Below are positions 18,046-34,180 of a stretch of 64,000 bases of DNA, piece by piece; the stretch's first letter is position 1; every line of letters starts with the position of its first letter. The notes under the pieces are model-generated. The model did not search any database and was not told the origin of the DNA. It worked only from the letters and a program-made list of their open reading frames with translations. A program made the translations under genes and the position numbers. Origin of the DNA: Podarcis muralis (Eukaryota); assembly GCF_964188315.1 (NCBI RefSeq), contig NC_135657.1, positions 78,182,001-78,246,000 of the forward strand, in the 5' to 3' direction.

Positions 18046-18417
18046 CAGTCTCAGCCTGAAGAGGAACACTCCTGTCACGTATTTAGAATATATGGCAACA
18101 TTTTGTTAGAGATCCTATTGGTGTGTTCTTCTCCTGAACTAGTTCAAAAATGGTCCAGCCTAAAAGAGCTGTTATGTGAAAAGCATTGTAATACAATTTC
18201 TGGTAGATATAGGAAGGACTATTAGCATCGTAGATGAAGCAACCTATACTTAGGAATGCTCAACAGCTGAATGCACAACCACCCCAGTTTTTGTATGTGG
18301 GTCCATGGAGAAAATACAGATCAAAAGCAAATTTACTACTATGGTAAAATAAAATAAAAATACAGGGAGTGTTGCAGCTTTCTGAATAGCCCAGACTATG
18401 AAAGAGCAAATTGATAT

Positions 18418-19174
18418 TGTCAGGGGTTCAGGAGCAGAGGGACAGGAGAGGGAGGAAGTAGAGACCGAGGGAGAGGAATCTGAGGGAGAAGTCAGCGAGG
18501 GTAGCCATCCGAGGTCTCTAAGTCTCTCCAGTGAATCAGAGGATTCACAGAAAGGGGCCCCAGTGGTCAGAGCCAGGGGGTTGCCAGAGGGAACACCCCA
18601 GGAAGGAGGGGCCAGAGGGGATTCAGAGAGCAGCAGCTGGAAATCGGGACCAACTTTCCCACCGGAGAGCAGTAAGGGGGAGGAGTCCCAAACATCGGCA
18701 GCAGGCAGCCTTCCGTCAGCGGAAGGACATGAGTCAGGGTTAGCCACGCCTGCATCAGAGAGCGAGGTAACGGTCAAAAGGAAGGTCAGGGGCAGCGCGC
18801 GCGCGCCAAGTTCAAATGTACAGGAGGGGGGCGCAATGGGCAGTCCGGAGAGAGAGCCGGGTCCCAAAGCCCGCCGGAGAGAAGGGGAGGAGTCCGAAGG
18901 GTCCGCTTCCGAGGCATCCCGGAAAGAAGGCACCCAGGGGGGTAGTAGGACCCAGAGGAGGAAGGAGAAACGTAGAAGGTGGAGTAAGGCTAGAGTCTTA
19001 AGCTGGTGTACAGGGGGCGGAGACTCAGACGAGGCTTCGCTGGTCTAGGGTTTAGACGTACAGACGCACGCTAGTGTTTGGAAATGGAAACTAAATGCCA
19101 ATAAAGACTTCTGTACAGTTCTAATGGCTAGCGTTGGTCTTCTGTGAGCTGAGACCGGGAGGCAGTCTCTGACA
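18418..19174 (+). repeat. 5' LTR (757 bp)
   Basis: Begins tgtcagggg, ends ctctgaca; matches 24205-24961 except C18524/T24311 and C19061/G24848 (by eye, supported by near-identical ORF translations in several frames). Confidence 0.98.
18996..19037 (+). promoter_or_regulatory. Predicted LTR core promoter and start of R
   Basis: TCTTAAG (TATA-like) about 28 nt upstream of 19027, the start site required by the self-priming model. Confidence 0.55.
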
Positions 19175-19176
19175 GT

Positions 19177-19187
19177 AAGCCTCGTCT
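19177..19187 (+). promoter_or_regulatory. Self-priming primer-binding site (no tRNA PBS)
   Basis: AAGCCTCGTCT, 2 nt after the 5' LTR, is the exact reverse complement of AGACGAGGCTT (19027-19037) in the LTR; no TGG-type tRNA PBS is present. Confidence 0.85.
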
Positions 19188-19286
19188 CACGTTATCATCG
19201 GTTTTCTTCGCCTCAAGCATCGCTAAGGAAGCGAGGCAGGGAGGGTGGAAGACTGGTGCCTTGCGAGCTCACAAGAGTCAGGCAAG

Positions 19287-20363
19287 ATGACTACAGAACA
19301 GAAAATAGCTTCCCTGCAAGAAGCGGTGACGCTACTCAACGCTGAAATAATCGCATCCAGGAAGAGAGAGGAAGAAGCGGCAGCTGCATGCAGAGATCTT
19401 CAAGCCAGGTTGGAAGGGCTTGTAAAGCAGGGGATCCCAGCACCCAGGTCCGAGGGGATCGGTTTGGGGAAGAGAGGAGGCAGCATTGTATCTCATTTTG
19501 ATGGGAATTTGCAGCAGTACCCCAATTTCAGAGCAGATGTGCTGTTTGCGCTGCAGCTGCTGGAAAGAGACTTTAGAGATGAGCGGGAAAAAGTGGGGTT
19601 TATTTTGTCTCATTTGCATGGGGACGCGAAATCATGGCTGCGCAACCTGTGGAGAGATCAGGATCCAGCGCTCCAAAGCGCAGATGCGTTCATTAAGGCG
19701 ATGGACTCCTGTTTCTTATCCAAAATAGACCTGGACATTGCCCGGAGGGACATATTTGGGCTAAGACAAGGGAAAGCCAGCGTAAGGCAGTATCATTCCC
19801 GGTTTTTTGCATTGGTCAACGCGCTGAATTGGGATAAGGATTCTCCGCCGGTTAGAGACCTTTTTTGGGAGGGTCTGAATGCACAGATCAAGGATGAGAT
19901 GGCAAGGGGAGAGAGACCCACCACCACTCAGCAAGTGGTTGAAAGAGCGTTGTCTATTGGGGTGAGGCAGGAAGAACGTCCGTGGAGCAAAGAAGAAGGG
20001 CGTTGGGGACGTTCACCAGCGAGAGTGCCCTCCCTCTTGCCCAGAGAGGCAGCGCGTGCGCAGTCCACGCCTCCACAGGGAGGGGGCGAGGAGCAGATGG
20101 AGATTGGCGGTGCTAGGGCTCACTCAGCTACCAGAGCCTTAACGCCAGGAGCAGTAAAATCGAAGCTGCCTAGAAGGAACAGGAAGTGTTATATATGTGA
20201 GAGTGCAGAGCACATGGCGAAAGAGTGTCCCCAGAGGAGTTTCAAGCACACTGCAGCTTCAGTGACAGTATTGGAAACAACTCAGCAGAGAGCACCACAG
20301 CAGGGAAACGACCAGGTCTGGCTGGAAGAGGAGGCACTGGGGCCCAGCCAGACGAGTCAGTGA
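19287..20363 (+). CDS. gag: Gag (358 aa from first ATG): coiled coil, retrotransposon capsid domain, CCHC zinc knuckle
   Basis: ATG with A at -3 (gcaagATG); FDGN...KVGFILSHLHGDAKSW capsid signature of sushi/PEG10-like Gags; CYICESAEHMAKEC = CX2CX4HX4C. Confidence 0.95.
   Translation: MTTEQKIASLQEAVTLLNAEIIASRKREEEAAAACRDLQARLEGLVKQGIPAPRSEGIGLGKRGGSIVSHFDGNLQQYPNFRADVLFALQLLERDFRDEREKVGFILSHLHGDAKSWLRNLWRDQDPALQSADAFIKAMDSCFLSKIDLDIARRDIFGLRQGKASVRQYHSRFFALVNALNWDKDSPPVRDLFWEGLNAQIKDEMARGERPTTTQQVVERALSIGVRQEERPWSKEEGRWGRSPARVPSLLPREAARAQSTPPQGGGEEQMEIGGARAHSATRALTPGAVKSKLPRRNRKCYICESAEHMAKECPQRSFKHTAASVTVLETTQQRAPQQGNDQVWLEEEALGPSQTSQ
20303..20362 (+). promoter_or_regulatory. -1 programmed ribosomal frameshift signal (G GGA AAC plus H-type pseudoknot)
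   Basis: Slippery heptamer 20303-20309 in the correct gag phase; 6-nt spacer; stem 1 GTCTGGCTGG (20316-20325) / CCAGCCAGAC (20344-20353); stem 2 CACTG (20335-20339) / CAGTG (20358-20362). Confidence 0.9.
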
Positions 20364-23300
20364 GGAAGTCCCCAGAGATTTTGCAGCCCACAGACCCCCT
20401 CCCGCCCAAGCCAGTGGTGCAGCTAACCGCATCGCTTCAGCTGCCCAATGGACTCACCTTAGAAGTGCCTATTACAATTGACTCTGGCAGTAACGCAGAC
20501 TTTATAGGATTGGAGTTCATTCAACAACACAACGTAGCATTACTGCCAGCCACACTGCCCCTGAAGGTTGTCACGGTGGATGGCAGGGAACTGCTAGGGG
20601 GGCAGGTGGTGCAGCAGACGCCGCCTATGGTGATGCAAATTGGGAATCACCGGGAAGTTATCAGTTTCAATGTCACCCAGCTGTCCGACACGCCTATAGT
20701 ATTAGGCATGAGTTGGCTGCACAGGCACAGCCCAGCATTGGCGTGGTACCAGCGCCACCTGACTTTTGGCTCCTCCTACTGTGCAGAACACTGCATTATA
20801 CCCAGCCCGGAAGGGGAAGAGGAGGACCCGCAGTTGCAGTTGGGCACGCTGCAAGCAGTACCCCACAAGTATGCGGAGTTTTTGGAGGTATTCTGCGAGA
20901 AGGAGGCGGACAAGCTACCCCCTCACAGACCCTATGATTGCAAGATTGACCTCCTGCCGGGGGCGACGCTGCCAACTGGGAAACTGTACTCCATGTCTGA
21001 GGATGAACTGCAAGAACTCAGGGAGTTCATAGATCACAATTTGAAGCGTGGGTTCATCCGGGAGTCGAAAGCGGTGGGAGGCAGTCCCGTATTCTTTGTG
21101 AAGAAGCGGGATACGCCCCAAAAAAGACTGGTGGTGGACTTCAGAATCTTGAATTCGAAAACCAAGCCCTCAGCTTTCCCCATGCCCAAGATAGACGACC
21201 TGCTAGCGACGGTGCGGAAAGGACGCGTTTTCACCAAGCTGGATCTACGTGGCGCGTACAACCTGATTCGCATGCGCGACGGAGACGAGTGGAAGACGGC
21301 CATGTTCACGCCACTGGGCACCTACGAATACAGAGTTATGCCCTTCGGATTACAAAATGGCTCTCACACTTTCCAAGCCTTTATGCATCACGTGCTGGCG
21401 GGGCTCCTTTACAAGAAGTGCGTATGCTTCCTGGACGACATCCTGATTTTTTCAGAATCGCGAGAGGCGCACGAGAGGGATGTCAGGGAAGTTCTGCAGA
21501 GACTGAAGGAGCACAGGCTGTACGCCAAACTGGAGAAGTGCCAGTTCGACGTGACGGGGGTGGATTTCCTGGGCTACAAGTTGTCGGACAAGGGGCTCGC
21601 CATGGACAGCGCCAAGGTTCGCGCAGTTTTGGACTGGAAGAGCCCACGCAATCGGAAGGAAGTCCAGCGGTTTGTCGGCTTTGCCAACTTTTACCGCAAG
21701 TTCATCAAGGGATTTGCCATGCAGACAGCGGCCATCACCGACACGCTCAGCTCCAAGAAGAAGAAATTCATCTGGACGGAGCAAGCGGAGCAGTCCTTTC
21801 AGAAACTCAAGCGTCTCTTCGCGTCCGAAGAGCAGCTGCTGCATGTGAATCCCAGCAGACCCATGAGGGTGGAGACGGACGCCTCAGACAGAGCCGTGGG
21901 AGCTGTCCTGTTGCAACAAGACCAGCAGGGGGACTGGAGGCCGTGCGCCTTCTACTCGAGGAAGCTCAGCAAGTCGGAGCAGAATTACACTATCTGGGAC
22001 AGGGAGTTGCTAGCCATACATGCAGCATTCAAGGCATGGAGGCACTTCCTCATCGGAGCCACACATACAGTGCAGGTCCACACGGACCACAAGAATCTGG
22101 AGTACTGGCGCACGGCTAGGTTCCTCAACCAGAGACACATTAGATGGGCAGAGTTCTTCGCGGACTTCGACTTCAAGATAGAGTACATCCCAGGCGACAA
22201 CAACGTGATGGCGGATGCATTGTCCAGAAAGCCGCAATACCTGGAGGAGGCGGCACCGTCGGCGGCCAAGCACATTTTCGCACCGGAAGCGTGGGCATGC
22301 GCGTCGGCAACCGTGGACCTGGACGCCGTACGTCGCGCGCTGCGGGAAGACCCCTTCGCACGGGCCAAGATGGAGGAGGTGCACAGGGGCACAGCGAGGG
22401 CCGACGAGTTCCAGATTCGCGATGGGTTGCTCCTCCACAAGGGAGCACTCTACGTGCCGGGAGATGACCTCCGCGCAAGGGTCCTGCAGCAGCTACACGA
22501 CGCTCCCACCGCAGGGCACTTTGGCAAAGAAAAGACTGTCGAACTCGTAGCCAGAGACTTTTGGTGGCCCAAGATGCGGGGGGAAGTAGCGGATTACGTC
22601 TCGAGATGTGACACCTGCCAAAGGGCCAAGTCAGTTCACAGACCGCCGGCGGGATTGCTGGAACCGCTGCAGACACCGTCTGAACCGTGGGAGAGGGTGG
22701 CCCTGGACTTCGTCACGGATCTGCCCAGCTCGAGGGGAAAGACAGCAGTGCTAGTGGTGGTGGACATGTTTACTAAGATGGCACACTTCATTCCGTGTGC
22801 GAAGGTAGCCACGGCAGAGCAGACCGCCAAACTGTTCATAGACCACGTGTTCAAGGTCCACGGTCTGCCACGGTCTATTCTTTCCGACCGGGGGCGACAG
22901 TTCATCTCGAACTTCTGGCAGAAGCTGATGGGCATTCTGAACGTCAAAGTCAATTTGGCGTCGGCGAGACACCCGCAGACCAACGGACAAGCGGAGAGGG
23001 TCAACGCCGTCATGCAGCAGTACCTAAGATGCTACGCCAACCAGCAGCCCACGACATGGGTGGACTACCTGCCGCTCGCCGAGTTCGCTTACAACAATAC
23101 GAAGCACGTGTCGACGGGGGTGACGCCGTTCTTCGCCAACAACGGGAGGCATCCCAGAACCTTCCCGGGTTTAGAGAGAGTGGGGGAGGGGGAGCCACAG
23201 GCAGCGGAGGCCTTAGCGTCGGAGTTGCAGGAGGTCCACGAACAGCTCAGGAGGCAGTTAGAACTAGCTAAGCACGCATACAAGGTGCAGGCCGACAGAC

Positions 23301-24835
23301 ACAGAAGAGTTGGGGAAGACATACAGGTGGGTGACTGGGTCTGGCTAGCAGCGCAAGCAGTGCCGACCAGATCATTAGCTAAGAAGAAGCTAGGACATAA
23401 GCAGCTAGGACCTTACCAAGTCCAGGCGCAGGTCAATCCAGTGGCCTTCCGGTTGGCTCTTCCGGAGGGTTCCAGAATGCATCCGGTGTTCCATAGATCG
23501 GTGCTCACGCCCTACAAAGCACCTCATAGGTTTCAGGAGCCAGACACCGCACCTGACCAGAGCAGTGAAGGGCCCAGAGTGCGGGGGCCGCCTAGGAAGG
23601 GACACATCAATGAGGTCACAGAGATTTTGGACTCCAGATGGGGGGAAGAGGGAGTAGAATATTTCCTAGCCAGAGAGGGTACCCCGGCCAGTGCCAACAG
23701 CTGGGTACCGGACTATGCCTTGGAGGAACCGCTGCTCAAAGAGGAGTTTCATGCCCTCTTCCCGCACAGGCCCATGCCAGCAGAGTATTTCGATGACTGG
23801 CTTTTCACACCCACTCTTTCAGCCAGCACATTCCTGGGGTTCGACTCGGACGAGGAACAGGCACCAGTCCCCAGCTCTCAGGTGGGTTCGCCACCGGGGT
23901 CTGCCTCAGACCACTCGTATTGGTGGGACGATCAACCAGAGGAGCAGTGGCGCAGGAAGTGGCTGAGGGGTCCTTGGATGGGACCACCCGAAGAGGGGGA
24001 GAGGGGCGAGACGGACATGGACGTGTTGGGGGACAACGTGGGGTTCGAGCATGAAGACAGAGAGATGGAAGCAGAGGAGAGCGACGTTGACGAGTACATG
24101 GGGGATGAACTGTATCCGGCAAGCACCCCCGCGACGACGGAGCACCCAGTACCCGCACCGGAAGGAGGGGAGGGGGGAAGGGGGGGCTTCGAGGGGGGGA
24201 TGGATGTCAGGGGTTCAGGAGCAGAGGGACAGGAGAGGGAGGAAGTAGAGACCGAGGGAGAGGAATCTGAGGGAGAAGTCAGCGAGGGTAGCCATCCGAG
24301 GTCTCTAAGTTTCTCCAGTGAATCAGAGGATTCACAGAAAGGGGCCCCAGTGGTCAGAGCCAGGGGGTTGCCAGAGGGAACACCCCAGGAAGGAGGGGCC
24401 AGAGGGGATTCAGAGAGCAGCAGCTGGAAATCGGGACCAACTTTCCCACCGGAGAGCAGTAAGGGGGAGGAGTCCCAAACATCGGCAGCAGGCAGCCTTC
24501 CGTCAGCGGAAGGACATGAGTCAGGGTTAGCCACGCCTGCATCAGAGAGCGAGGTAACGGTCAAAAGGAAGGTCAGGGGCAGCGCGCGCGCGCCAAGTTC
24601 AAATGTACAGGAGGGGGGCGCAATGGGCAGTCCGGAGAGAGAGCCGGGTCCCAAAGCCCGCCGGAGAGAAGGGGAGGAGTCCGAAGGGTCCGCTTCCGAG
24701 GCATCCCGGAAAGAAGGCACCCAGGGGGGTAGTAGGACCCAGAGGAGGAAGGAGAAACGTAGAAGGTGGAGTAAGGCTAGAGTCTTAAGCTGGTGTACAG
24801 GGGGCGGAGACTCAGACGAGGCTTCGCTGGTCTAG
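20303..24835 (+). CDS. pol: Pol (protease, RT, RNase H, integrase, chromodomain, long C-terminal tail), expressed as a Gag-Pol fusion of about 1850 aa by -1 frameshift
   Basis: ORF 20225-24835 is stop-free. PR DSG 20480-20488; RT FLDD 21428-21439; RH TDAS about 21875; IN HHCC 22496-22618; D22706, D22886, E22994 (D,D35E); GPY 23408-23416; chromodomain about 23606-23764. Confidence 0.97.
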   Translation, partial: GKRPGLAGRGGTGAQPDESVRKSPEILQPTDPLPPKPVVQLTASLQLPNGLTLEVPITIDSGSNADFIGLEFIQQHNVALLPATLPLKVVTVDGRELLGGQVVQQTPPMVMQIGNHREVISFNVTQLSDTPIVLGMSWLHRHSPALAWYQRHLTFGSSYCAEHCIIPSPEGEEEDPQLQLGTLQAVPHKYAEFLEVFCEKEADKLPPHRPYDCKIDLLPGATLPTGKLYSMSEDELQELREFIDHNLKRGFIRESKAVGGSPVFFVKKRDTPQKRLVVDFRILNSKTKPSAFPMPKIDDLLATVRKGRVFTKLDLRGAYNLIRMRDGDEWKTAMFTPLGTYEYRVMPFGLQNGSHTFQAFMHHVLAGLLYKKCVCFLDDILIFSESREAHERDVREVLQRLKEHRLYAKLEKCQFDVTGVDFLGYKLSDKGLAMDSAKVRAVLDWKSPRNRKEVQRFVGFANFYRKFIKGFAMQTAAITDTLSSKKKKFIWTEQAEQSFQKLKRLFASEEQLLHVNPSRPMRVETDASDRAVGAVLLQQDQQGDWRPCAFYSRKLSKSEQNYTIWDRELLAIHAAFKAWRHFLIGATHTVQVHTDHKNLEYWRTARFLNQRHIRWAEFFADFDFKIEYIPGDNNVMADALSRKPQYLEEAAPSAAKHIFAPEAWACASATVDLDAVRRALREDPFARAKMEEVHRGTARADEFQIRDGLLLHKGALYVPGDDLRARVLQQLHDAPTAGHFGKEKTVELVARDFWWPKMRGEVADYVSRCDTCQRAKSVHRPPAGLLEPLQTPSEPWERVALDFVTDLPSSRGKTAVLVVVDMFTKMAHFIPCAKVATAEQTAKLFIDHVFKVHGLPRSILSDRGRQFISNFWQKLMGILNVKVNLASARHPQTNGQAERVNAVMQQYLRCYANQQPTTWVDYLPLAEFAYNNTKHVSTGVTPFFANNGRHPRTFPGLERVGEGEPQAAEALASELQEVHEQLRRQLELAKHAYKVQADRHRRVGEDIQVGDWVWLAAQAVPTRSLAKKKLGHKQLGPYQVQAQVNPVAFRLALPEGSRMHPVFHRSVLTPYKAPHRFQEPDTAPDQSSEGPRVRGPPRKGHINEVTEILDSRWGEEGVEYFLAREGTPASANSWVPDYALEEPLLKEEFHALFPHRPMPAEYFDDWLFTPTLSASTFLGFDSDEEQAPVPSSQVGSPPGSASDHSYWWDDQPEEQWRRKWLRGPWMGPPEEGERGETDMDVLGDNVGFEHEDREMEAEESDVDEYMGDELYPASTPATTEHPVPAPEGGEGGRGGFEGGMDVRGSGAEGQEREEVETEGEESEGEVSEGSHPRSLSFSSESEDSQKGAPVVRARGLPEGTPQEGGARGDSESSSWKSGPTFPPESSKGEESQTSAAGSLPSAEGHESGLATPASESEVTVKRKVRGSARAPSSNVQEGGAMGSPEREPGPKARRREGEESEGSASEASRKEGTQGGSRTQRRKEKRRRWSKARVLSWCTGGGDSDEASLV
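24161..24204 (+). promoter_or_regulatory. Polypurine tract, lying inside the pol ORF
   Basis: gaaggaggggaggggggaagggggggcttcgagggggggatgga abuts the 3' LTR. Confidence 0.85.
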
Positions 24836-24961
24836 GGTTTAGACGTAGAGACGCACGCTAGTGTTTGGAAATGGAAACTAAATGCCAATAAAGACTTCTG
24901 TACAGTTCTAATGGCTAGCGTTGGTCTTCTGTGAGCTGAGACCGGGAGGCAGTCTCTGACA
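24205..24961 (+). repeat. 3' LTR (757 bp)
   Basis: Direct repeat of 18418-19174 at offset 5787; preceded by a polypurine tract, followed by TSD GATAT. Confidence 0.98.
24887..24892 (+). terminator. LTR polyadenylation signal AATAAA (5' LTR copy at 19100-19105)
   Basis: Hexamer about 70 nt from the LTR end, downstream of the pol stop codon. Confidence 0.8.
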
Positions 24962-24980
24962 GATATGAACTTACAGAAGC

Positions 24981-25324: not shown

Positions 25325-26884
25325 ACAGAAGCTATCAGCTGTGCTGCTTGTTCCATAAAGTTGTACTAATGTTTGAAGTGACTAAATGGGTCTGAGCCAT
25401 TACTCAGAAGCAACAGGATAATAGGGTATTGACAGCAGCATTCATTAATTTGATTTCTTACTGAACACTATGAGTGGACATGCTACAGTAGTTGGATCCT
25501 CATTTCAGATGCCTGTACATATTGATAGGAAATAAAGGGAAAATTACAGCACTGAGCATTGCCGCAATGCAGGAGATGAGCTAATGGAACATCACTGGGC
25601 AGGCATCTCAAGCAAGTTGATTGCAAAAGAAGAGAAGCCAGCTTGTTGTCAGCTCCAGAAGGGTGCAACCTCCCCCCCCCCCCCCCAGTGACTGTGATCA
25701 AGACAGTGACGAGCCACTTCACTGAAGCTTGAATGCTAAGACTTGGGTTTGCCCTCCCACACACTTTGGGTGGGCAGACAAACCACAGACTGTCATTTGC
25801 AGAGTCAAAAAGCACTGGGTACAGCATTTAATTACTGTGTTAACACTTGGGAATGCTTTCTGTGCCAAGAGCCAGTTGCGGAGGGTTGGTGGTACTCGGC
25901 TGTCCTTTCACTACAGCATAATAACAGGATAAACCTGCACCTGGGGTTGAAGCTATGCAAGTGAGAGTGCAGGGATGTGTTACCAAACGTCATTCCCTAT
26001 GACAAAGCAAAGGTGCAGGTTTTTTGCCTTACTTGTCCTATTGTTCCTTTGCTCTCCTTGGAAAAATGTTGTTCTTGGTAGTTCTGTGTGGCAACAGTAA
26101 AGGATTTTCACAGTCTGAGCTTGGGTGACCAGGCCTTCTGTTCTTTTTAACACTTCTGTGGAAGGGAATTTTATTACCCTTGTTGCTTCACAAACCTCAA
26201 ATCTCTCTTTTACACAACTCTGCTCATTAGAATGCCTGTAGGGCAGCCTCTTCTTGGCCACCAAGATATTATTTGGACTATATCTCCTTCATCTTTGACC
26301 ATTGACTATGCTGGTGATGATCTCAGGACTCAAGGTTGTGGGAGGCTGAAGGCTGCTGTAGGAGGCTTTGTAGCCTAAGGTGAAGGACAAGATGGCGCCC
26401 TTCACCAGTACACATACAGAAGCTGACTGGACTGGTAGATGAGACTCACTTTGACACAAGCATCCTTCCATACTTTAAGGGGTACAGTGCATGCTGTGAG
26501 GCACACACAGTTTTGTCTTCCTGCAGAGGGGAATGGCTGGAGCAACAGCCAGGAGAGCTGCCACTGCTGCCCTTCAACATCTGCCACCTGAGGTGGCTGC
26601 CTAATGATAGGGTGAGTCCAGTGTGGAGGTTTCCATGTATGGAGCTGTACATTTGGTAATGAACCCTACTATTGCAGCTGTATGAGCAACATGCATCCAT
26701 AGCTAATGTAATTTGTAGATAGTGCTTGCTCCCACCCCATCCTGCCCTGCAAACACACACCTAATCAGGCACATATCAAGTATTTGGAATGCTCAAAAAG
26801 GACTATTAGCACTAAATCATTTGGATACTTAAGTTCTCAGTAAGTATATTTTACATAGCAAATCTGGGGGTTTTCCCATTAGGA

Positions 26885-28109
26885 CAGTGTTTCCCAACCG
26901 GTGTTCCACGGCACACTAGTGTGCCGCGAGACGTTGCCTGGTGTGCCGTGGGAGGGAGGCGGGCGAGTCGGGCGGCGAGAGGCGGGGCGGCGAGGATCCG
27001 CGTCAAGCCAGGGGCGGCTCCGCGGTGGTGGTGCCGAGGTTTCTCTCTCCATTCTCCCCTCACACACACACACAGGAAATAACACAGGATCAGCTGACAG
27101 GACCCGGCCAATGGGGCGGCGGCGGGGCAGCGCGCGCAAAAGGGAGGAGCGCGAGGCGGCGGCGGCGCAGGGCGGGAGGGCGGCGCATTGCGCGTGCTCA
27201 AACCCGCCCTCCGAGGCGCAGAGGGGAGCTGTGCAAGCGCCTTCTTCAACCACGCGCTCATTTAAAGAGGCAGCGCCCGGGCGGAACAGAACTCTGTGCC
27301 TCTCGCCTAGGGATGAAGGCGGGCACCGGCTTAAGCCAGTAGTAGCCTAATAATGCATTAACTTCCGTGGGACTTCCAAGTAAACACAGTAGCCCAGCGC
27401 CTCCCTCCCCAAAAGGAGGGGGAATTACAGCAGCGCAGGCGACTCCTGCGTCTCCCCGATATTTAAGGCTGCCATCCCTCGTGCAGACTTACGCGGGAGC
27501 AAAACCCCGTGAACAAACTAGGGCTTACTCCAGAGTAAATACGGGTAGGATCTGGCTGCAGTTGTACAAGAAGAAGCAATTGATAACGTTTTCGCGCCTT
27601 CGGGATTGCCTTCACGCCTTCCTCCTCCCGGGTCCTTGAGAGCGCGGGAAGCGGCAGCGCGAAACCGGCGTTGAGCCTGGTAGGTATTGCGCTTGCCAAG
27701 GCAGTCATTTGGGAAATGAAAACTTGCAAAGCAAGCAACCAGTTCAATCTGAAGTACGTGTATGCTTAATATCCTGTATCTGAAACCTGTTCTGCCCCCT
27801 CCCCCACACTTGGTGCCATTTTCATCTACACATGCAGCAGAGTAAGTTGACCCAGAATAGTACCAATTCAGATGGGAGAATGACAGTGCTGAATGCTTTC
27901 CCATGTAGAACAGTCCCTGCAAATAAAAACCTAGCATATTTGGAAGAGGGATGCTAGCCTAACCATTACCTTCTATGCTGTTACTATTTTTTTATTATTT
28001 TTTTTACATAAGTAAAAAGTGACCTTTCCCCATCTGGCATGGTGGTGTGCCTCGAGATTTTTTTCATGAAACAAGTGTGCCTTTGCCCAAAAAAGGTTGG
28101 GAAACACTG
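26885..28109. mobile_element. Non-autonomous hAT DNA transposon (1225 bp) with GC-rich interior
   Basis: Perfect 15-bp TIR CAGTGTTTCCCAACC / GGTTGGGAAACACTG; perfect 8-bp TSD CATTAGGA (26877-26884, 28110-28117); GTGTGCC subterminal repeats; no transposase ORF. Confidence 0.92.
26920..27700 (+). promoter_or_regulatory. CpG-island / promoter-like segment inside the hAT element
   Basis: Dense CpG; CCAAT 27108-27112 followed by GGGGCGG; NRF1-like GCGCATTGCGC 27183-27193; TTTAAA 27261; donor-like CTG|GTAGGT at 27680. Confidence 0.55.
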
Positions 28110-33829: not shown

Positions 33830-34180
33830 GGCAATCTCTGTCCCAGGAAGGCTTGTACACCTGATCCCTTTGTTGAGGCTTCTCTTCTAATTCCCGTCCC
33901 CCAGCTGGAAAGTCACAAACAGAGACACACAGAGAAAAGTCATAAGACCTATCTTGAAACATTTTTTTCTGTGAATTAATTTTTTTTGAAACTAGTTTCC
34001 TAGGCAATCTCTGTCCCAGGGAGGCTTGTACACCTGATCCCTTTGTTAAGGCTTCTCTTCTAATTCCCGTCCCCCAGCTGGAAAGTCACAGACAGAGACA
34101 CACAAAGAAGAGTCATAAGACCTATCTTGAAACATTTTTTTCTGTGAATTAATTTTTTTTGAAACTAGTTTCCTAGGCAA
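33830..34180. repeat. Tandem duplication, 173-bp unit x2
   Basis: 33830-34002 and 34003-34175, about 5 substitutions, GGCAA microhomology at the junctions. Confidence 0.95.

What the first reader, a model, noticed from the sequence alone, without database searches (positions are those of the whole stretch)
23786..23857. FLGFDSDEE: candidate LEDGF/TND-interacting motif (TIM/IBM mimic) in the integrase tail
Seen: YFDDWLF-TPTLSAST-FLGFDSDEE directly after the chromodomain. Established (recalled, not searched): proteins binding TFIIS N-terminal domains such as the LEDGF/HRP2 IBD use an aromatic helix, a linker and an acidic FxGF motif; MLL1/KMT2A has EQFLGFGSDEE, and PogZ, JPO2 and IWS1 carry similar motifs, often enhanced by CK2 phosphorylation (S-D-E-E is a CK2 consensus). 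The element matches MLL1 at 8 of 9 residues. Inference: this retrotransposon may tether integration complexes to transcription-elongation chromatin through host-motif mimicry, convergent with HIV's use of LEDGF by a different interface. I know of no description of this for a Gypsy element.
Basis: partly seen in the sequence, partly recalled or inferred. Interest (0 to 1): 0.85.

Follow-up and report, generated by a model that had tools for sequence, protein, structure and literature searches.

The report
Host-like LEDGF-binding motif in retrotransposon integrase
A young, intact lizard Gypsy-type retrotransposon carries, just after its integrase chromodomain, a short, strongly conserved peptide built like the motif that host proteins such as MLL1 use to dock onto the chromatin reader LEDGF, so it may choose its insertion sites by copying a host signal; actual binding is untested.

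Summary
Window 23786-23857 (+) encodes YFDDWLF-TPTLSAST-FLGF-DSDEE inside an intact 1536-aa pol ORF of a very young chromovirus (LTRs 2/757 different, TSD GATAT).

The peptide lies right after a chromodomain fold, in a region predicted to be disordered. It matches the MLL1 LEDGF-binding peptide (PDB 2MSR, FLGFGSDEE) at 8 of 9 residues.

- Seven diverged lineages of the same family keep F-x-G-F, the upstream FDDWLF, and S-x-E-E, while the x position varies freely (L/Q/H/R).
- dN/dS is about 0.07, the same as the chromodomain, against about 0.32 for the rest of the tail.
- Sister families at 30-45% identity carry the same grammar at the same place and spacing, with canonical acidic linkers (RFWEEQF-ATTDEEEED-FVGF). 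Some carry two copies in tandem.
- The motif marks one well-supported clade. None of 126 outgroup chromoviruses or 77 metagenome loci has it.
- The same clade has lost the chromodomain's aromatic methyl-lysine cage.

The most likely reading is a LEDGF/HRP2-type TND-interacting motif that tethers the integrase.

Weak points are that no binding was tested, this element's linker is Ser/Thr-rich rather than acidic, and the PDB profile hit is weak (E = 0.4). I found no published description of such a motif in a retrotransposon.

The parts
18413..18417 (+). Target-site duplication GATAT (left copy); right copy at 24962-24966
   Evidence: Flanks of the two LTRs read directly
18418..19174 (+). 5' LTR, 757 bp, TG...CA ends
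   Evidence: Direct repeat with 24205-24961; 2 mismatches in 757
19177..19187 (+). Candidate self-priming primer-binding site, an exact reverse complement of 19027-19037 in the LTR
   Evidence: no tRNA genes and no TGG-type PBS
19245..20363 (+). gag ORF (Retrotrans_gag, Ty3 capsid, CCHC knuckle); first ATG at 19287
20225..24835 (+). pol ORF, 1536 aa, in the -1 frame relative to gag: protease, RT, RNase H, integrase (H2C2, rve, SH3_Tf2-1), chromodomain and a long tail
23609..23773 (+). Chromodomain (aa 1129-1183) lacking all three aromatic-cage residues (N, R, T in place of Y, W, Y)
   Evidence: Pfam Chromo E = 4.7e-4; AF2 pLDDT 84-91; Foldseek hits to HP1/CBX chromodomains; cage comparison
23789..23806 (+). 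FDDWLF (aa 1189-1194), the hydrophobic/acidic PhixxPhiPhi element and candidate helix of the motif
   Evidence: Invariant in 7 family lineages; aligns with W-x-x-x-F of sister families at fixed spacing
23807..23830 (+). Linker TPTLSAST (aa 1195-1202): Ser/Thr-rich, no acidic residues
   Evidence: 6 of 8 positions invariant in the family; sister families have acidic linkers of the same length
23831..23842 (+). FLGF (aa 1203-1206), the FxGF core
   Evidence: F, G and F invariant while x = L/Q/H/R; invariant across families
23843..23857 (+). DSDEE (aa 1207-1211), an acidic flank with a CK2-type S-x-x-E site
   Evidence: S1208, E1210 and E1211 invariant; same register as the GSDEE of MLL1 in 2msr_A
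23915..23977 (+). Second conserved block SYWWDDQPEEQWRRKWLRGPW (aa 1231-1251), possibly the remnant helix of a second motif copy
   Evidence: Conservation 0.81; dN/dS about 0.17; AF2 helix; aligns with the second motif of family B
24191..24204 (+). Polypurine tract GAGGGGGGGATGGA, lying inside the pol ORF
24205..24961 (+). 3' LTR; its first 631 nt encode the last 210 aa of the pol tail
24734..24796 (+). Basic patch plus LSWC near the C-terminus of the tail (aa 1504-1524), conserved across families; possibly a nuclear localisation signal
   Evidence: Seen in the tails of the window, P0007, P0008 and P0009

Best explanation
The segment is a functional short linear motif in the disordered C-terminal tail of the integrase of an active lizard chromovirus. 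It is built on the grammar of host TND-interacting motifs of the LEDGF/HRP2-binding subclass (IBMs): a short hydrophobic helix (FDDWLF), an 8-9 residue linker, FxGF, and an acidic flank that CK2 could phosphorylate.

Proposed mechanism (inferred, not shown): after reverse transcription, the integrase tail docks into the two hydrophobic pockets and the basic patch of the TFIIS-N-terminal-type domain (IBD) of the host H3K36me2/3 readers PSIP1/LEDGF and/or HDGFL2/HRP2. This tethers the intasome to transcribed chromatin.

In this family the linker serines and threonines (S1199 and S1201 at positions -4 and -2, where MLL1 has Glu) and S1208 would need phosphorylation to supply the negative charge. 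That would make binding depend on a kinase.

The clade that acquired the motif also lost the chromodomain's methyl-lysine cage, which fits a switch of tether.

Shown here: the motif's presence, its conservation, protein-level selection, predicted disorder, restriction to one clade, and loss of the cage. Inferred: the binding partner and the effect on integration.
For: - Exact motif and coordinates.
- Known grammar from the literature: helix, then a linker of 8-16 residues rich in D/E and phosphorylatable S/T, then FxGF. FxGF is essential for all known LEDGF/HRP2 partners, and proteins may carry several TIMs in series (PMC9987994). An upstream helix with a conserved Phe and phospho-regulation are also described (PMC10854676).
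- MLL1 S153, two residues after FxGF, is phosphorylated by CK2 (PMC7220354).
- The FxGF-to-LEDGF-domain interaction is conserved from flies (JIL-1, DFxGFDE) to humans (PMC6877644).
- A profile of the retroelement motifs has a single hit at E <= 10 in the whole PDB: the MLL1 peptide of the LEDGF IBD complex, 2msr_A.
- Family conservation: aa 1186-1211 have 19 of 26 invariant columns, and the variation falls at x of FxGF.
- dN/dS is 0.07 with 10 synonymous-only codon changes, against 0.32 for the rest of the tail and 0.73 for the adjacent 18 codons.
- Sister families: RFWEEQF-ATTDEEEED-FVGF, RWEAVF-ESTDDDSSS-FRGF, QWKTVF-ESDENEDTD-FLGF and RFWEEEF-GTTDDKED-FVGF, at the same spacing, with two tandem copies in P0009 and P0159.
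- Each lineage keeps at least one intact copy.
- One clade with SH-aLRT 100; 0 of 126 outgroup proteins and 0 of 77 metagenome loci have the motif.
- AF2 predicts disorder over the motif.
- The cage residues are Y/F/W, W and Y/F in nearly all outgroups and are lost in the clade.
- The element is intact and young, so the motif belongs to a working copy.
Against: - No binding, structural or integration-site data exist.
- The linker of this element (TPTLSAST) has no acidic residue, whereas described TIM linkers are acidic, so the unphosphorylated peptide may bind weakly or not at all.
- The PDB hit is not significant on its own (E = 0.4) and rests mostly on FLGFxSDEE.
- A profile of the sister family alone did not retrieve any known IBM, and the single peptide retrieved only a chance hit.
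- AF2 predicts only a three-residue helical turn at the candidate helix, at moderate confidence.
- All named relatives come from lacertid lizards, so motif gain and cage loss together amount to one evolutionary event, not a replicated correlation.
- The E/D-x-E-x-FxGF consensus is from my memory. Only MLL1 and JIL-1 were verified through tools.
Confidence: 0.5

Rival explanations
1. The segment is a conserved short linear motif, but its partner is not a TFIIS-N-terminal-type domain. The PhixxPhiPhi element plus acidic residues and FxGF could act as a generic acidic activation-domain-like or other docking motif (coactivator, Mediator or TFIIH-type pockets, or nuclear import or export factors). 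It could also mark a processing site where the element's protease releases the acidic tail.
For: - F-D-D-W-L-F fits the generic PhixxPhiPhi pattern of acidic activation motifs (established knowledge, not tested).
- The linker of this family is not acidic.
- There is no significant database link to known IBMs.
- The tail contains further conserved blocks of unknown role.
Against: - The three-part arrangement with fixed 8-9 residue spacing and invariant F-x-G-F is specific to the TIM/IBM grammar (PMC9987994).
- Sister families carry acidic linkers with E/D at positions -4 and -2, as MLL1 does.
- Tandem duplication is typical of TIMs and unexpected for a protease site.
- The free x position (L/Q/H/R) would lie at or next to the scissile bond, which argues against a cleavage site.
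Confidence: 0.3
2. The segment has an intramolecular or structural role. It could be a C-terminal extension that packs on the cage-less chromodomain or on the integrase (for example occupying the former histone-peptide groove, or regulating multimerisation), rather than recruiting a host protein.
For: - It follows the chromodomain directly and is as conserved as the chromodomain.
- AF2 gives intermediate confidence (about 67) to AEYFDDWL next to the domain.
- The cage is lost, so the groove is free for another ligand.
Against: - FxGF and the linker are predicted to be disordered (pLDDT below 50).
- In P0008 the intact motif lies about 50 residues away from the chromodomain, and in family B a second copy lies about 45 residues further on. 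Adjacency to the domain is therefore not required.
Confidence: 0.12
3. The resemblance is chance, or the conservation reflects a nucleotide-level element or simply recent common ancestry. On this view there is no protein-level function.
For: - The tail is acidic and low in complexity, so an acidic run after any FxGF is not rare.
- FxGF alone occurs in 2.2% of shuffled tails.
- The match to MLL1 was noticed after the fact.
Against: - Synonymous sites across the motif are saturated (dS about 2, 10 synonymous-only codon changes) while the residues are kept (dN/dS 0.07).
- The grammar persists in families that are only 30-45% identical and have different residues.
- The grammar appears in 1 of 200,000 shuffles and in 0 of 203 outgroup tails.
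Confidence: 0.03

Closest known systems
Host TND-interacting motifs of the LEDGF/HRP2 subclass (IBMs) in KMT2A/MLL1, JPO2, POGZ, IWS1, MED1, ASK and Drosophila JIL-1
   Same: - The same three-part grammar (short hydrophobic helix, 8-9 residue linker, FxGF) with an acidic, CK2-type flank.
- 8 of 9 identity with the MLL1 core (2msr_A).
- Located in a disordered region.
- Tandem copies in sister families, as in JPO2 and IWS1 (PMC9987994).
   Different: - It is encoded by a retrotransposon integrase tail, not a host transcription factor.
- In this element the linker is Ser/Thr/Pro-rich with no Asp or Glu.
- Binding has not been tested.
MLV integrase C-terminal tail peptide binding the ET domain of BET proteins
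   Same: A short peptide in the disordered C-terminal tail of an integrase that engages a host chromatin-reader adaptor and directs integration (PMC4027182, PMC6974304). This is the closest precedent for the mechanism.
   Different: The host domain (ET) and the motif are different. MLV is an infectious gammaretrovirus. The MLV interaction is shown experimentally, whereas the one proposed here is inferred.
HIV-1/lentiviral integrase binding to the LEDGF/p75 IBD
   Same: The same proposed host tether, and the same expected outcome: integration into transcribed, H3K36me-marked chromatin.
   Different: HIV uses a pre-structured interface on the dimer of the integrase catalytic core, not a linear FxGF motif (PMC10854676). 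The element here would use the cellular-partner mode.
Chromoviruses with canonical (group I) or group II chromodomains, such as MAGGY, Tf1/sushi and plant Tekay/Reina
   Same: - Domain order protease-RT-RNase H-integrase-chromodomain.
- A candidate self-priming PBS as in Tf1/sushi.
- A pol ORF that reaches into the 3' LTR, as reported for CRM elements (PMC3605345).
   Different: - The Y-W-Y cage is lost: fully in this family, and group II-like in the sister family. PMC3605345 says group II chromodomains were until then found only in plants.
- The usual basic (GRGRPRRR-type) tail is replaced by a long acidic tail carrying the FxGF motif.

Membership tests
TND-interacting motif, LEDGF/HRP2-binding subclass (IBM) | An F-x-G-F core | tested here: met
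   FLGF at aa 1203-1206. F, G and F are invariant in 7 family lineages and in all sister-family copies, and x is variable.
TND-interacting motif, LEDGF/HRP2-binding subclass (IBM) | An upstream short alpha-helix with conserved Phe or aliphatic residues | tested here: inconclusive
   FDDWLF is invariant and aligns with W-x-x-x-F in sister families. AF2 gives only a three-residue helical turn at pLDDT about 67. Folding on binding cannot be assessed here.
TND-interacting motif, LEDGF/HRP2-binding subclass (IBM) | A linker 8-16 residues long | tested here: met
   8 residues (TPTLSAST) between FDDWLF and FLGF, or 9 in the register shared with sister families.
TND-interacting motif, LEDGF/HRP2-binding subclass (IBM) | A linker enriched in Asp/Glu (acidic) | tested here: not met
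   TPTLSAST contains no D or E. The feature is met in sister families (ATTDEEEED, ESDENEDTD, GTTDDKED). In this element the negative charge would have to come from phosphorylated Ser/Thr.
TND-interacting motif, LEDGF/HRP2-binding subclass (IBM) | Lies in an intrinsically disordered region | tested here: met
   AF2 pLDDT is below 50 over aa ~1194-1230, next to a confident chromodomain.
TND-interacting motif, LEDGF/HRP2-binding subclass (IBM) | Ser/Thr sites phosphorylated by CK2 that tune affinity | not testable with these tools
   The S1208-x-x-E1211 consensus is present and invariant, in the register of MLL1 S153 (PMC7220354). Phosphorylation itself cannot be tested.
TND-interacting motif, LEDGF/HRP2-binding subclass (IBM) | Direct binding to a TFIIS N-terminal domain (LEDGF IBD or HRP2 TND) | not testable with these tools
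Chromovirus (Ty3/Gypsy with a chromodomain integrase) | LTRs and gag, with pol in the order PR-RT-RNase H-IN | tested here: met
Chromovirus (Ty3/Gypsy with a chromodomain integrase) | A chromodomain fold at the integrase C-terminus | tested here: met
   Pfam Chromo is below its cut-off (20.5 against 25.1 bits), but the AF2 model matches HP1 and CBX chromodomains (TM up to 0.87).
Group I (canonical) chromodomain | A Y-W-Y aromatic cage for methyl-lysine | tested here: not met
   N, R and T at the three positions in this element. Outgroups have Y/F/W, W and Y/F in about 95-98% of 126 sequences.
Tf1/sushi-type self-priming elements | A PBS complementary to the 5' end of the element's own transcript | tested here: inconclusive
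   An 11-nt exact complement between 19177-19187 and 19027-19037. The transcription start site is unknown.

The most novel reading that the evidence does not exclude
A lineage of vertebrate chromoviruses abandoned heterochromatin targeting: it lost the chromodomain methyl-lysine cage and replaced the basic tail. It then retargeted integration to transcribed chromatin by evolving, in its integrase tail, a copy of the host FxGF-type TIM that docks on the LEDGF/HRP2 TND. In the family seen here, binding would be gated by Ser/Thr phosphorylation. That would be the first natural retrotransposon shown to use the cellular-partner interface of LEDGF. It would be convergent with lentiviruses in its target and with MLV in its strategy.
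Probability: 0.4. Interest if true: 0.85.

Novelty: new variant of a known kind. Interest (0 to 1): 0.72.

Why it matters
How LTR retrotransposons of vertebrates choose their integration sites is largely unknown. Well-understood tethers come from yeast elements and from retroviruses.

If this motif binds LEDGF/HRP2, three things follow:
- LEDGF has been exploited independently by a retrotransposon, through the cellular-partner (SLiM) interface rather than the lentiviral one.
- There would be a natural example of a tether switch within one TE lineage, from a methyl-lysine reader to host-motif mimicry.
- There would be a compact, portable peptide for studying or redirecting integration toward H3K36me-marked chromatin.

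The element is intact and young, and sister families offer natural variants: an acidic versus a Ser/Thr linker, and one versus two copies. The hypothesis can therefore be tested directly.

Tried and rejected
- The single motif peptide searched against PDB sequences gave only a chance hit to citrate synthase (E = 0.18).
- A profile of the sister family (A3) against the PDB gave only a chance HGPRT hit and no IBM. The A1 profile hit to MLL1 is therefore driven largely by FLGFxSDEE.
- The key primary papers (Sharma 2018, Cermakova 2021, Tesina 2015) are not held. The E/D-x-E-x-FxGF consensus could not be quoted and is marked as recalled.
- A literal search for FLGF was swamped by flagellar flgF and filaggrin papers.
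- A search for relatives of P0008 returned only P0008 itself. The viral-contig scan found nothing. The metagenome scan found only distant chromodomain-only relatives, which I used as negative controls.
- The organisms behind the ENA and Logan contigs L001-L003 could not be identified from their accessions.
- Genomic context of the insertion: neighbouring ORFs have no Pfam match, and there are no Rfam or tRNA hits. Whether this copy sits in a gene body could not be judged.
- FFAT, LIR and AP2 WxxF readings of EYFDDWLF were considered from memory and dropped, because the sister-family sequences do not fit them.
- The nucleotide-level cis-element reading was rejected by the codon analysis.
Full report
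**1. What is in the sequence**

Window 20225-24835 (+) is one uninterrupted 1536-aa ORF. Pfam finds protease, RT, RNase H, integrase zinc finger, integrase core and the Tf2-1-type SH3 domain. Upstream lies a gag ORF with a capsid domain and a CCHC knuckle, and pol is in the -1 frame relative to it.

The element is bounded by 757-bp LTRs at 18418-19174 and 24205-24961. They differ at 2 positions, end in TG...CA, and are flanked by a 5-bp duplication, GATAT. It is the only copy in the window. It is GC-rich (55%) within 41% GC host DNA. This is therefore an intact, very recently inserted Ty3/Gypsy element.

Residues 1188-1211 read YFDDWLFTPTLSASTFLGFDSDEE and map exactly to 23786-23857.

**2. Is it directly after the chromodomain?**

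Yes. Pfam Chromo matches aa ~1129-1176 only below its threshold (E = 4.7e-4). However, an AlphaFold2 model built on an alignment of relatives is confident for this stretch (pLDDT 84-91, three strands and a helix). Foldseek places it on HP1, CBX and CDYL chromodomains (1KNA: TM 0.87, rmsd 0.9 A).

The motif starts five residues after the chromodomain helix, and pLDDT drops below 50 across the linker and FxGF. The motif therefore lies in a predicted disordered tail.

**3. Chance**

I verified the recalled MLL1 sequence with a tool. The KMT2A 21-mer in PDB 2MSR aligns as EDEQFLGFGSDEE, giving 8 of 9 identity.
- In the six-frame translation of all 64 kb, no other nine-mer reaches even 6 of 9.
- FxGF alone would occur in 2.2% of shuffled tails.
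- The full grammar, which I defined after seeing the data, occurs in 1 of 200,000 shuffles.

**4.

A word-indexed search with the tail found five clusters of Podarcis muralis 'Gypsy retrotransposon integrase-like' proteins, 65-80% identical over the tail. An exhaustive HMMER search of 1.84 billion representatives added more.

In the seven lineages of this family the segment reads [ED][YF]FDDWLFTPT[LC]S[AG]STF[LQHR]GF[DAS]S[DA]EE. Of 26 columns, 19 are invariant, the same level as the chromodomain, and conservation then drops at once. The free x between invariant F, G and F is what an FxGF motif predicts.

At the codon level I compared the window with an independent contig (L003). The motif has 10 synonymous-only and 5 non-synonymous codon differences:

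| Segment | dN/dS |
|---|---|
| Motif (aa 1186-1211) | about 0.07 (dS saturated) |
| Chromodomain | 0.07 |
| Next 18 codons | 0.73 |
| Rest of the tail | 0.32 |

The constraint therefore acts on the protein, not on the DNA or RNA. A decayed Podarcis lilfordi copy (L004) carries the same sequence, broken by frameshifts.

**5. More distant relatives carry a more canonical version**

These are proteins only 30-45% identical in this region, and the motifs sit at the same position and spacing.

| Protein | Source | Motif(s) |
|---|---|---|
| P0009 | Logan contig | RFWEEQF-ATTDEEEED-FVGF, then a second copy RWEAVF-ESTDDDSSS-FRGF |
| P0159 | P. muralis | two intact copies |
| P0158 | P. muralis | first copy degenerate (FEEF), second intact |
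| P0047 | P. muralis | RFWEEEF-GTTDDKED-FVGF |
| P0008 | ENA contig | QWKTVF-ESDENEDTD-FLGF |

These versions have acidic linkers, with E/D at positions -4 and -2 as in MLL1's E-D-E-Q-FLGF. Every lineage retains at least one intact copy.

In the window's family a second conserved, helix-forming block (SYWWDDQPEEQWRRKWL, 23915-23977) aligns with the helix of the second copy. It may be the remnant of that copy.

**6. Distribution**

On a tree of the SH3 plus chromodomain region (141 sequences), all motif-bearing proteins form one clade with SH-aLRT 100 on a long stem. The clade also holds one frameshifted copy and four decayed Zootoca copies.

None of the other 126 proteins has the grammar. Many have basic GRGRPRRR-type tails instead. 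None of 77 distant chromovirus loci from metagenomes has FxGF in its tail.

**7. An unexpected correlate**

The three aromatic-cage positions of the chromodomain are Y/F/W, W and Y/F in about 95-98% of the 126 outgroup sequences. In the motif clade the first is N or H, the third is E or T, and the central W is kept only in the sister families. The window's family has N, R/K/E and T.

The literature defines group I chromoviral chromodomains by the Y-W-Y cage that reads H3K9me. Group II chromodomains lack the first and third residues and had until then been seen only in plants (PMC3605345).

This vertebrate clade has thus very probably lost methyl-lysine reading on the same branch that gained the FxGF tail. 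That is one evolutionary event, so it is suggestive rather than statistical.

**8. Comparison with what is known**

- According to the TND review (PMC9987994), TIMs consist of an obligate short helix, a flexible linker of 8-16 residues rich in D/E and phosphorylatable S/T, and an optional FxGF.
- FxGF is present in, and essential for, every known partner of the LEDGF and HRP2 TNDs. CK2 phosphorylation raises affinity, and several proteins carry TIMs in series.
- PMC10854676 describes the same architecture.
- PMC7220354 places the MLL1 IBM at aa 125-155 with CK2 sites that include S153. That is the Ser two residues after FxGF, the register of the invariant S1208 here.
- PMC6877644 shows that the FxGF-to-LEDGF-domain pair works in Drosophila, so a lizard orthologue is a reasonable target.

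The element meets the FxGF, order, spacing, disorder and CK2-consensus criteria. It fails the 'acidic linker' criterion in this family, though the sister families meet it. Binding is untestable here.

A profile of the retroelement motifs has the MLL1 peptide of the LEDGF complex as its only PDB hit, but at E = 0.4. A sister-family-only profile and the single peptide found nothing relevant.

**9. Mechanism and rivals**

The best-supported reading (confidence about 0.5) is that the integrase tail mimics a host IBM and tethers the intasome to PSIP1/LEDGF or HDGFL2/HRP2, and so to H3K36me-marked transcribed chromatin. In this family, Ser/Thr phosphorylation would supply the linker charge.

The closest precedent for the mechanism is the MLV integrase tail peptide binding the BET ET domain (PMC4027182, PMC6974304). 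The target would be the one HIV uses, but reached through the cellular-partner interface.

Rivals:
- The same motif docks on another host pocket or marks a processing site (about 0.3).
- It has an intramolecular role next to the cage-less chromodomain (about 0.12).
- It is chance or a nucleotide-level constraint (about 0.03; the codon data contradict this).

**10. Novelty**

Full-text searches combined retrotransposon, chromovirus or transposon terms with LEDGF, IBM, TND and TIM terms. They returned no description of such a motif in any transposable element.

Tethering through an integrase tail is a known kind of system, but this tether would be new. I rate it a new variant of a known kind, of high interest but unproven.

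**11. Limits**

- All named relatives are lacertid, and database coverage of reptile TE proteins is thin.
- The organisms behind three contigs are unknown.
- No complex modelling or insertion-site analysis was possible.
- The E/D-x-E-x-FxGF consensus is recalled, not quoted.

Noticed in passing
window 19177-19187 and 19027-19037: The 11 nt that start 2 nt after the 5' LTR (AAGCCTCGTCT) are the exact reverse complement of a site inside the LTR. There is no tRNA-type TGG primer-binding site. This looks like the self-priming arrangement of Tf1/sushi elements and would place the start of R near 19027.
   Followed up: partly
window 24191-24835: The pol ORF reads through the polypurine tract and 631 nt into the 3' LTR, so the 5' LTR carries the same ORF (18398-19048). 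The in-frame LTR start (VDVR/MDVR) is kept in distant relatives (P0008, P0009, P0159, Zootoca P0156), so this arrangement is ancestral to the clade.
   Followed up: partly
window 23609-23773: The chromodomain has lost all three aromatic-cage residues (N, R, T). Sister families keep only the central W, a group II-like state that PMC3605345 says had until then been found only in plants. Nearly all of the 126 outgroup chromoviruses have the full cage.
   Followed up: yes
window 23915-23977: A second conserved Trp-rich block, SYWWDDQPEEQWRRKWLRGPW, is predicted helical and has dN/dS about 0.17. It aligns with the helix of the second FxGF motif of the sister family. A degenerate NVGFEH follows at 24035-24052.
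   Followed up: partly
window 24734-24796: A basic patch followed by L-S-W-C near the C-terminus of the tail (RTQRRKEKRRRWSKARVLSWC) recurs in P0007, P0008 and P0009 (LLCWKR, LLNWCR). It may be a nuclear localisation signal or some other terminal motif, and it is encoded inside the LTR.
   Followed up: no
L004:8600-9900 (Podarcis lilfordi, GCA_947686815.1): A decayed copy of the same family has two frameshifts inside the motif region, so the annotated protein P0006 ends in out-of-frame sequence. The DNA still spells FDDWLFTPTLSASTF.GFDSDEE across three frames.
   Followed up: yes
proteins P0015 and P0155-P0157 (Zootoca vivipara): These are decayed members of the same clade, annotated as 'uncharacterized protein LOC...'. 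They have a degraded chromodomain and an acidic tail ending in EEEDLSGF, a possible degenerate PhixGF.
   Followed up: partly
window 26000-28000: A GC-rich stretch (51.5% against about 41% around it) has overlapping ORFs of 130-150 aa on both strands and no Pfam match. It could be a CpG island, an exon or another repeat.
   Followed up: no
window 33830-34180: A tandem duplication with a 173-bp unit, two copies, 97% identical.
   Followed up: no
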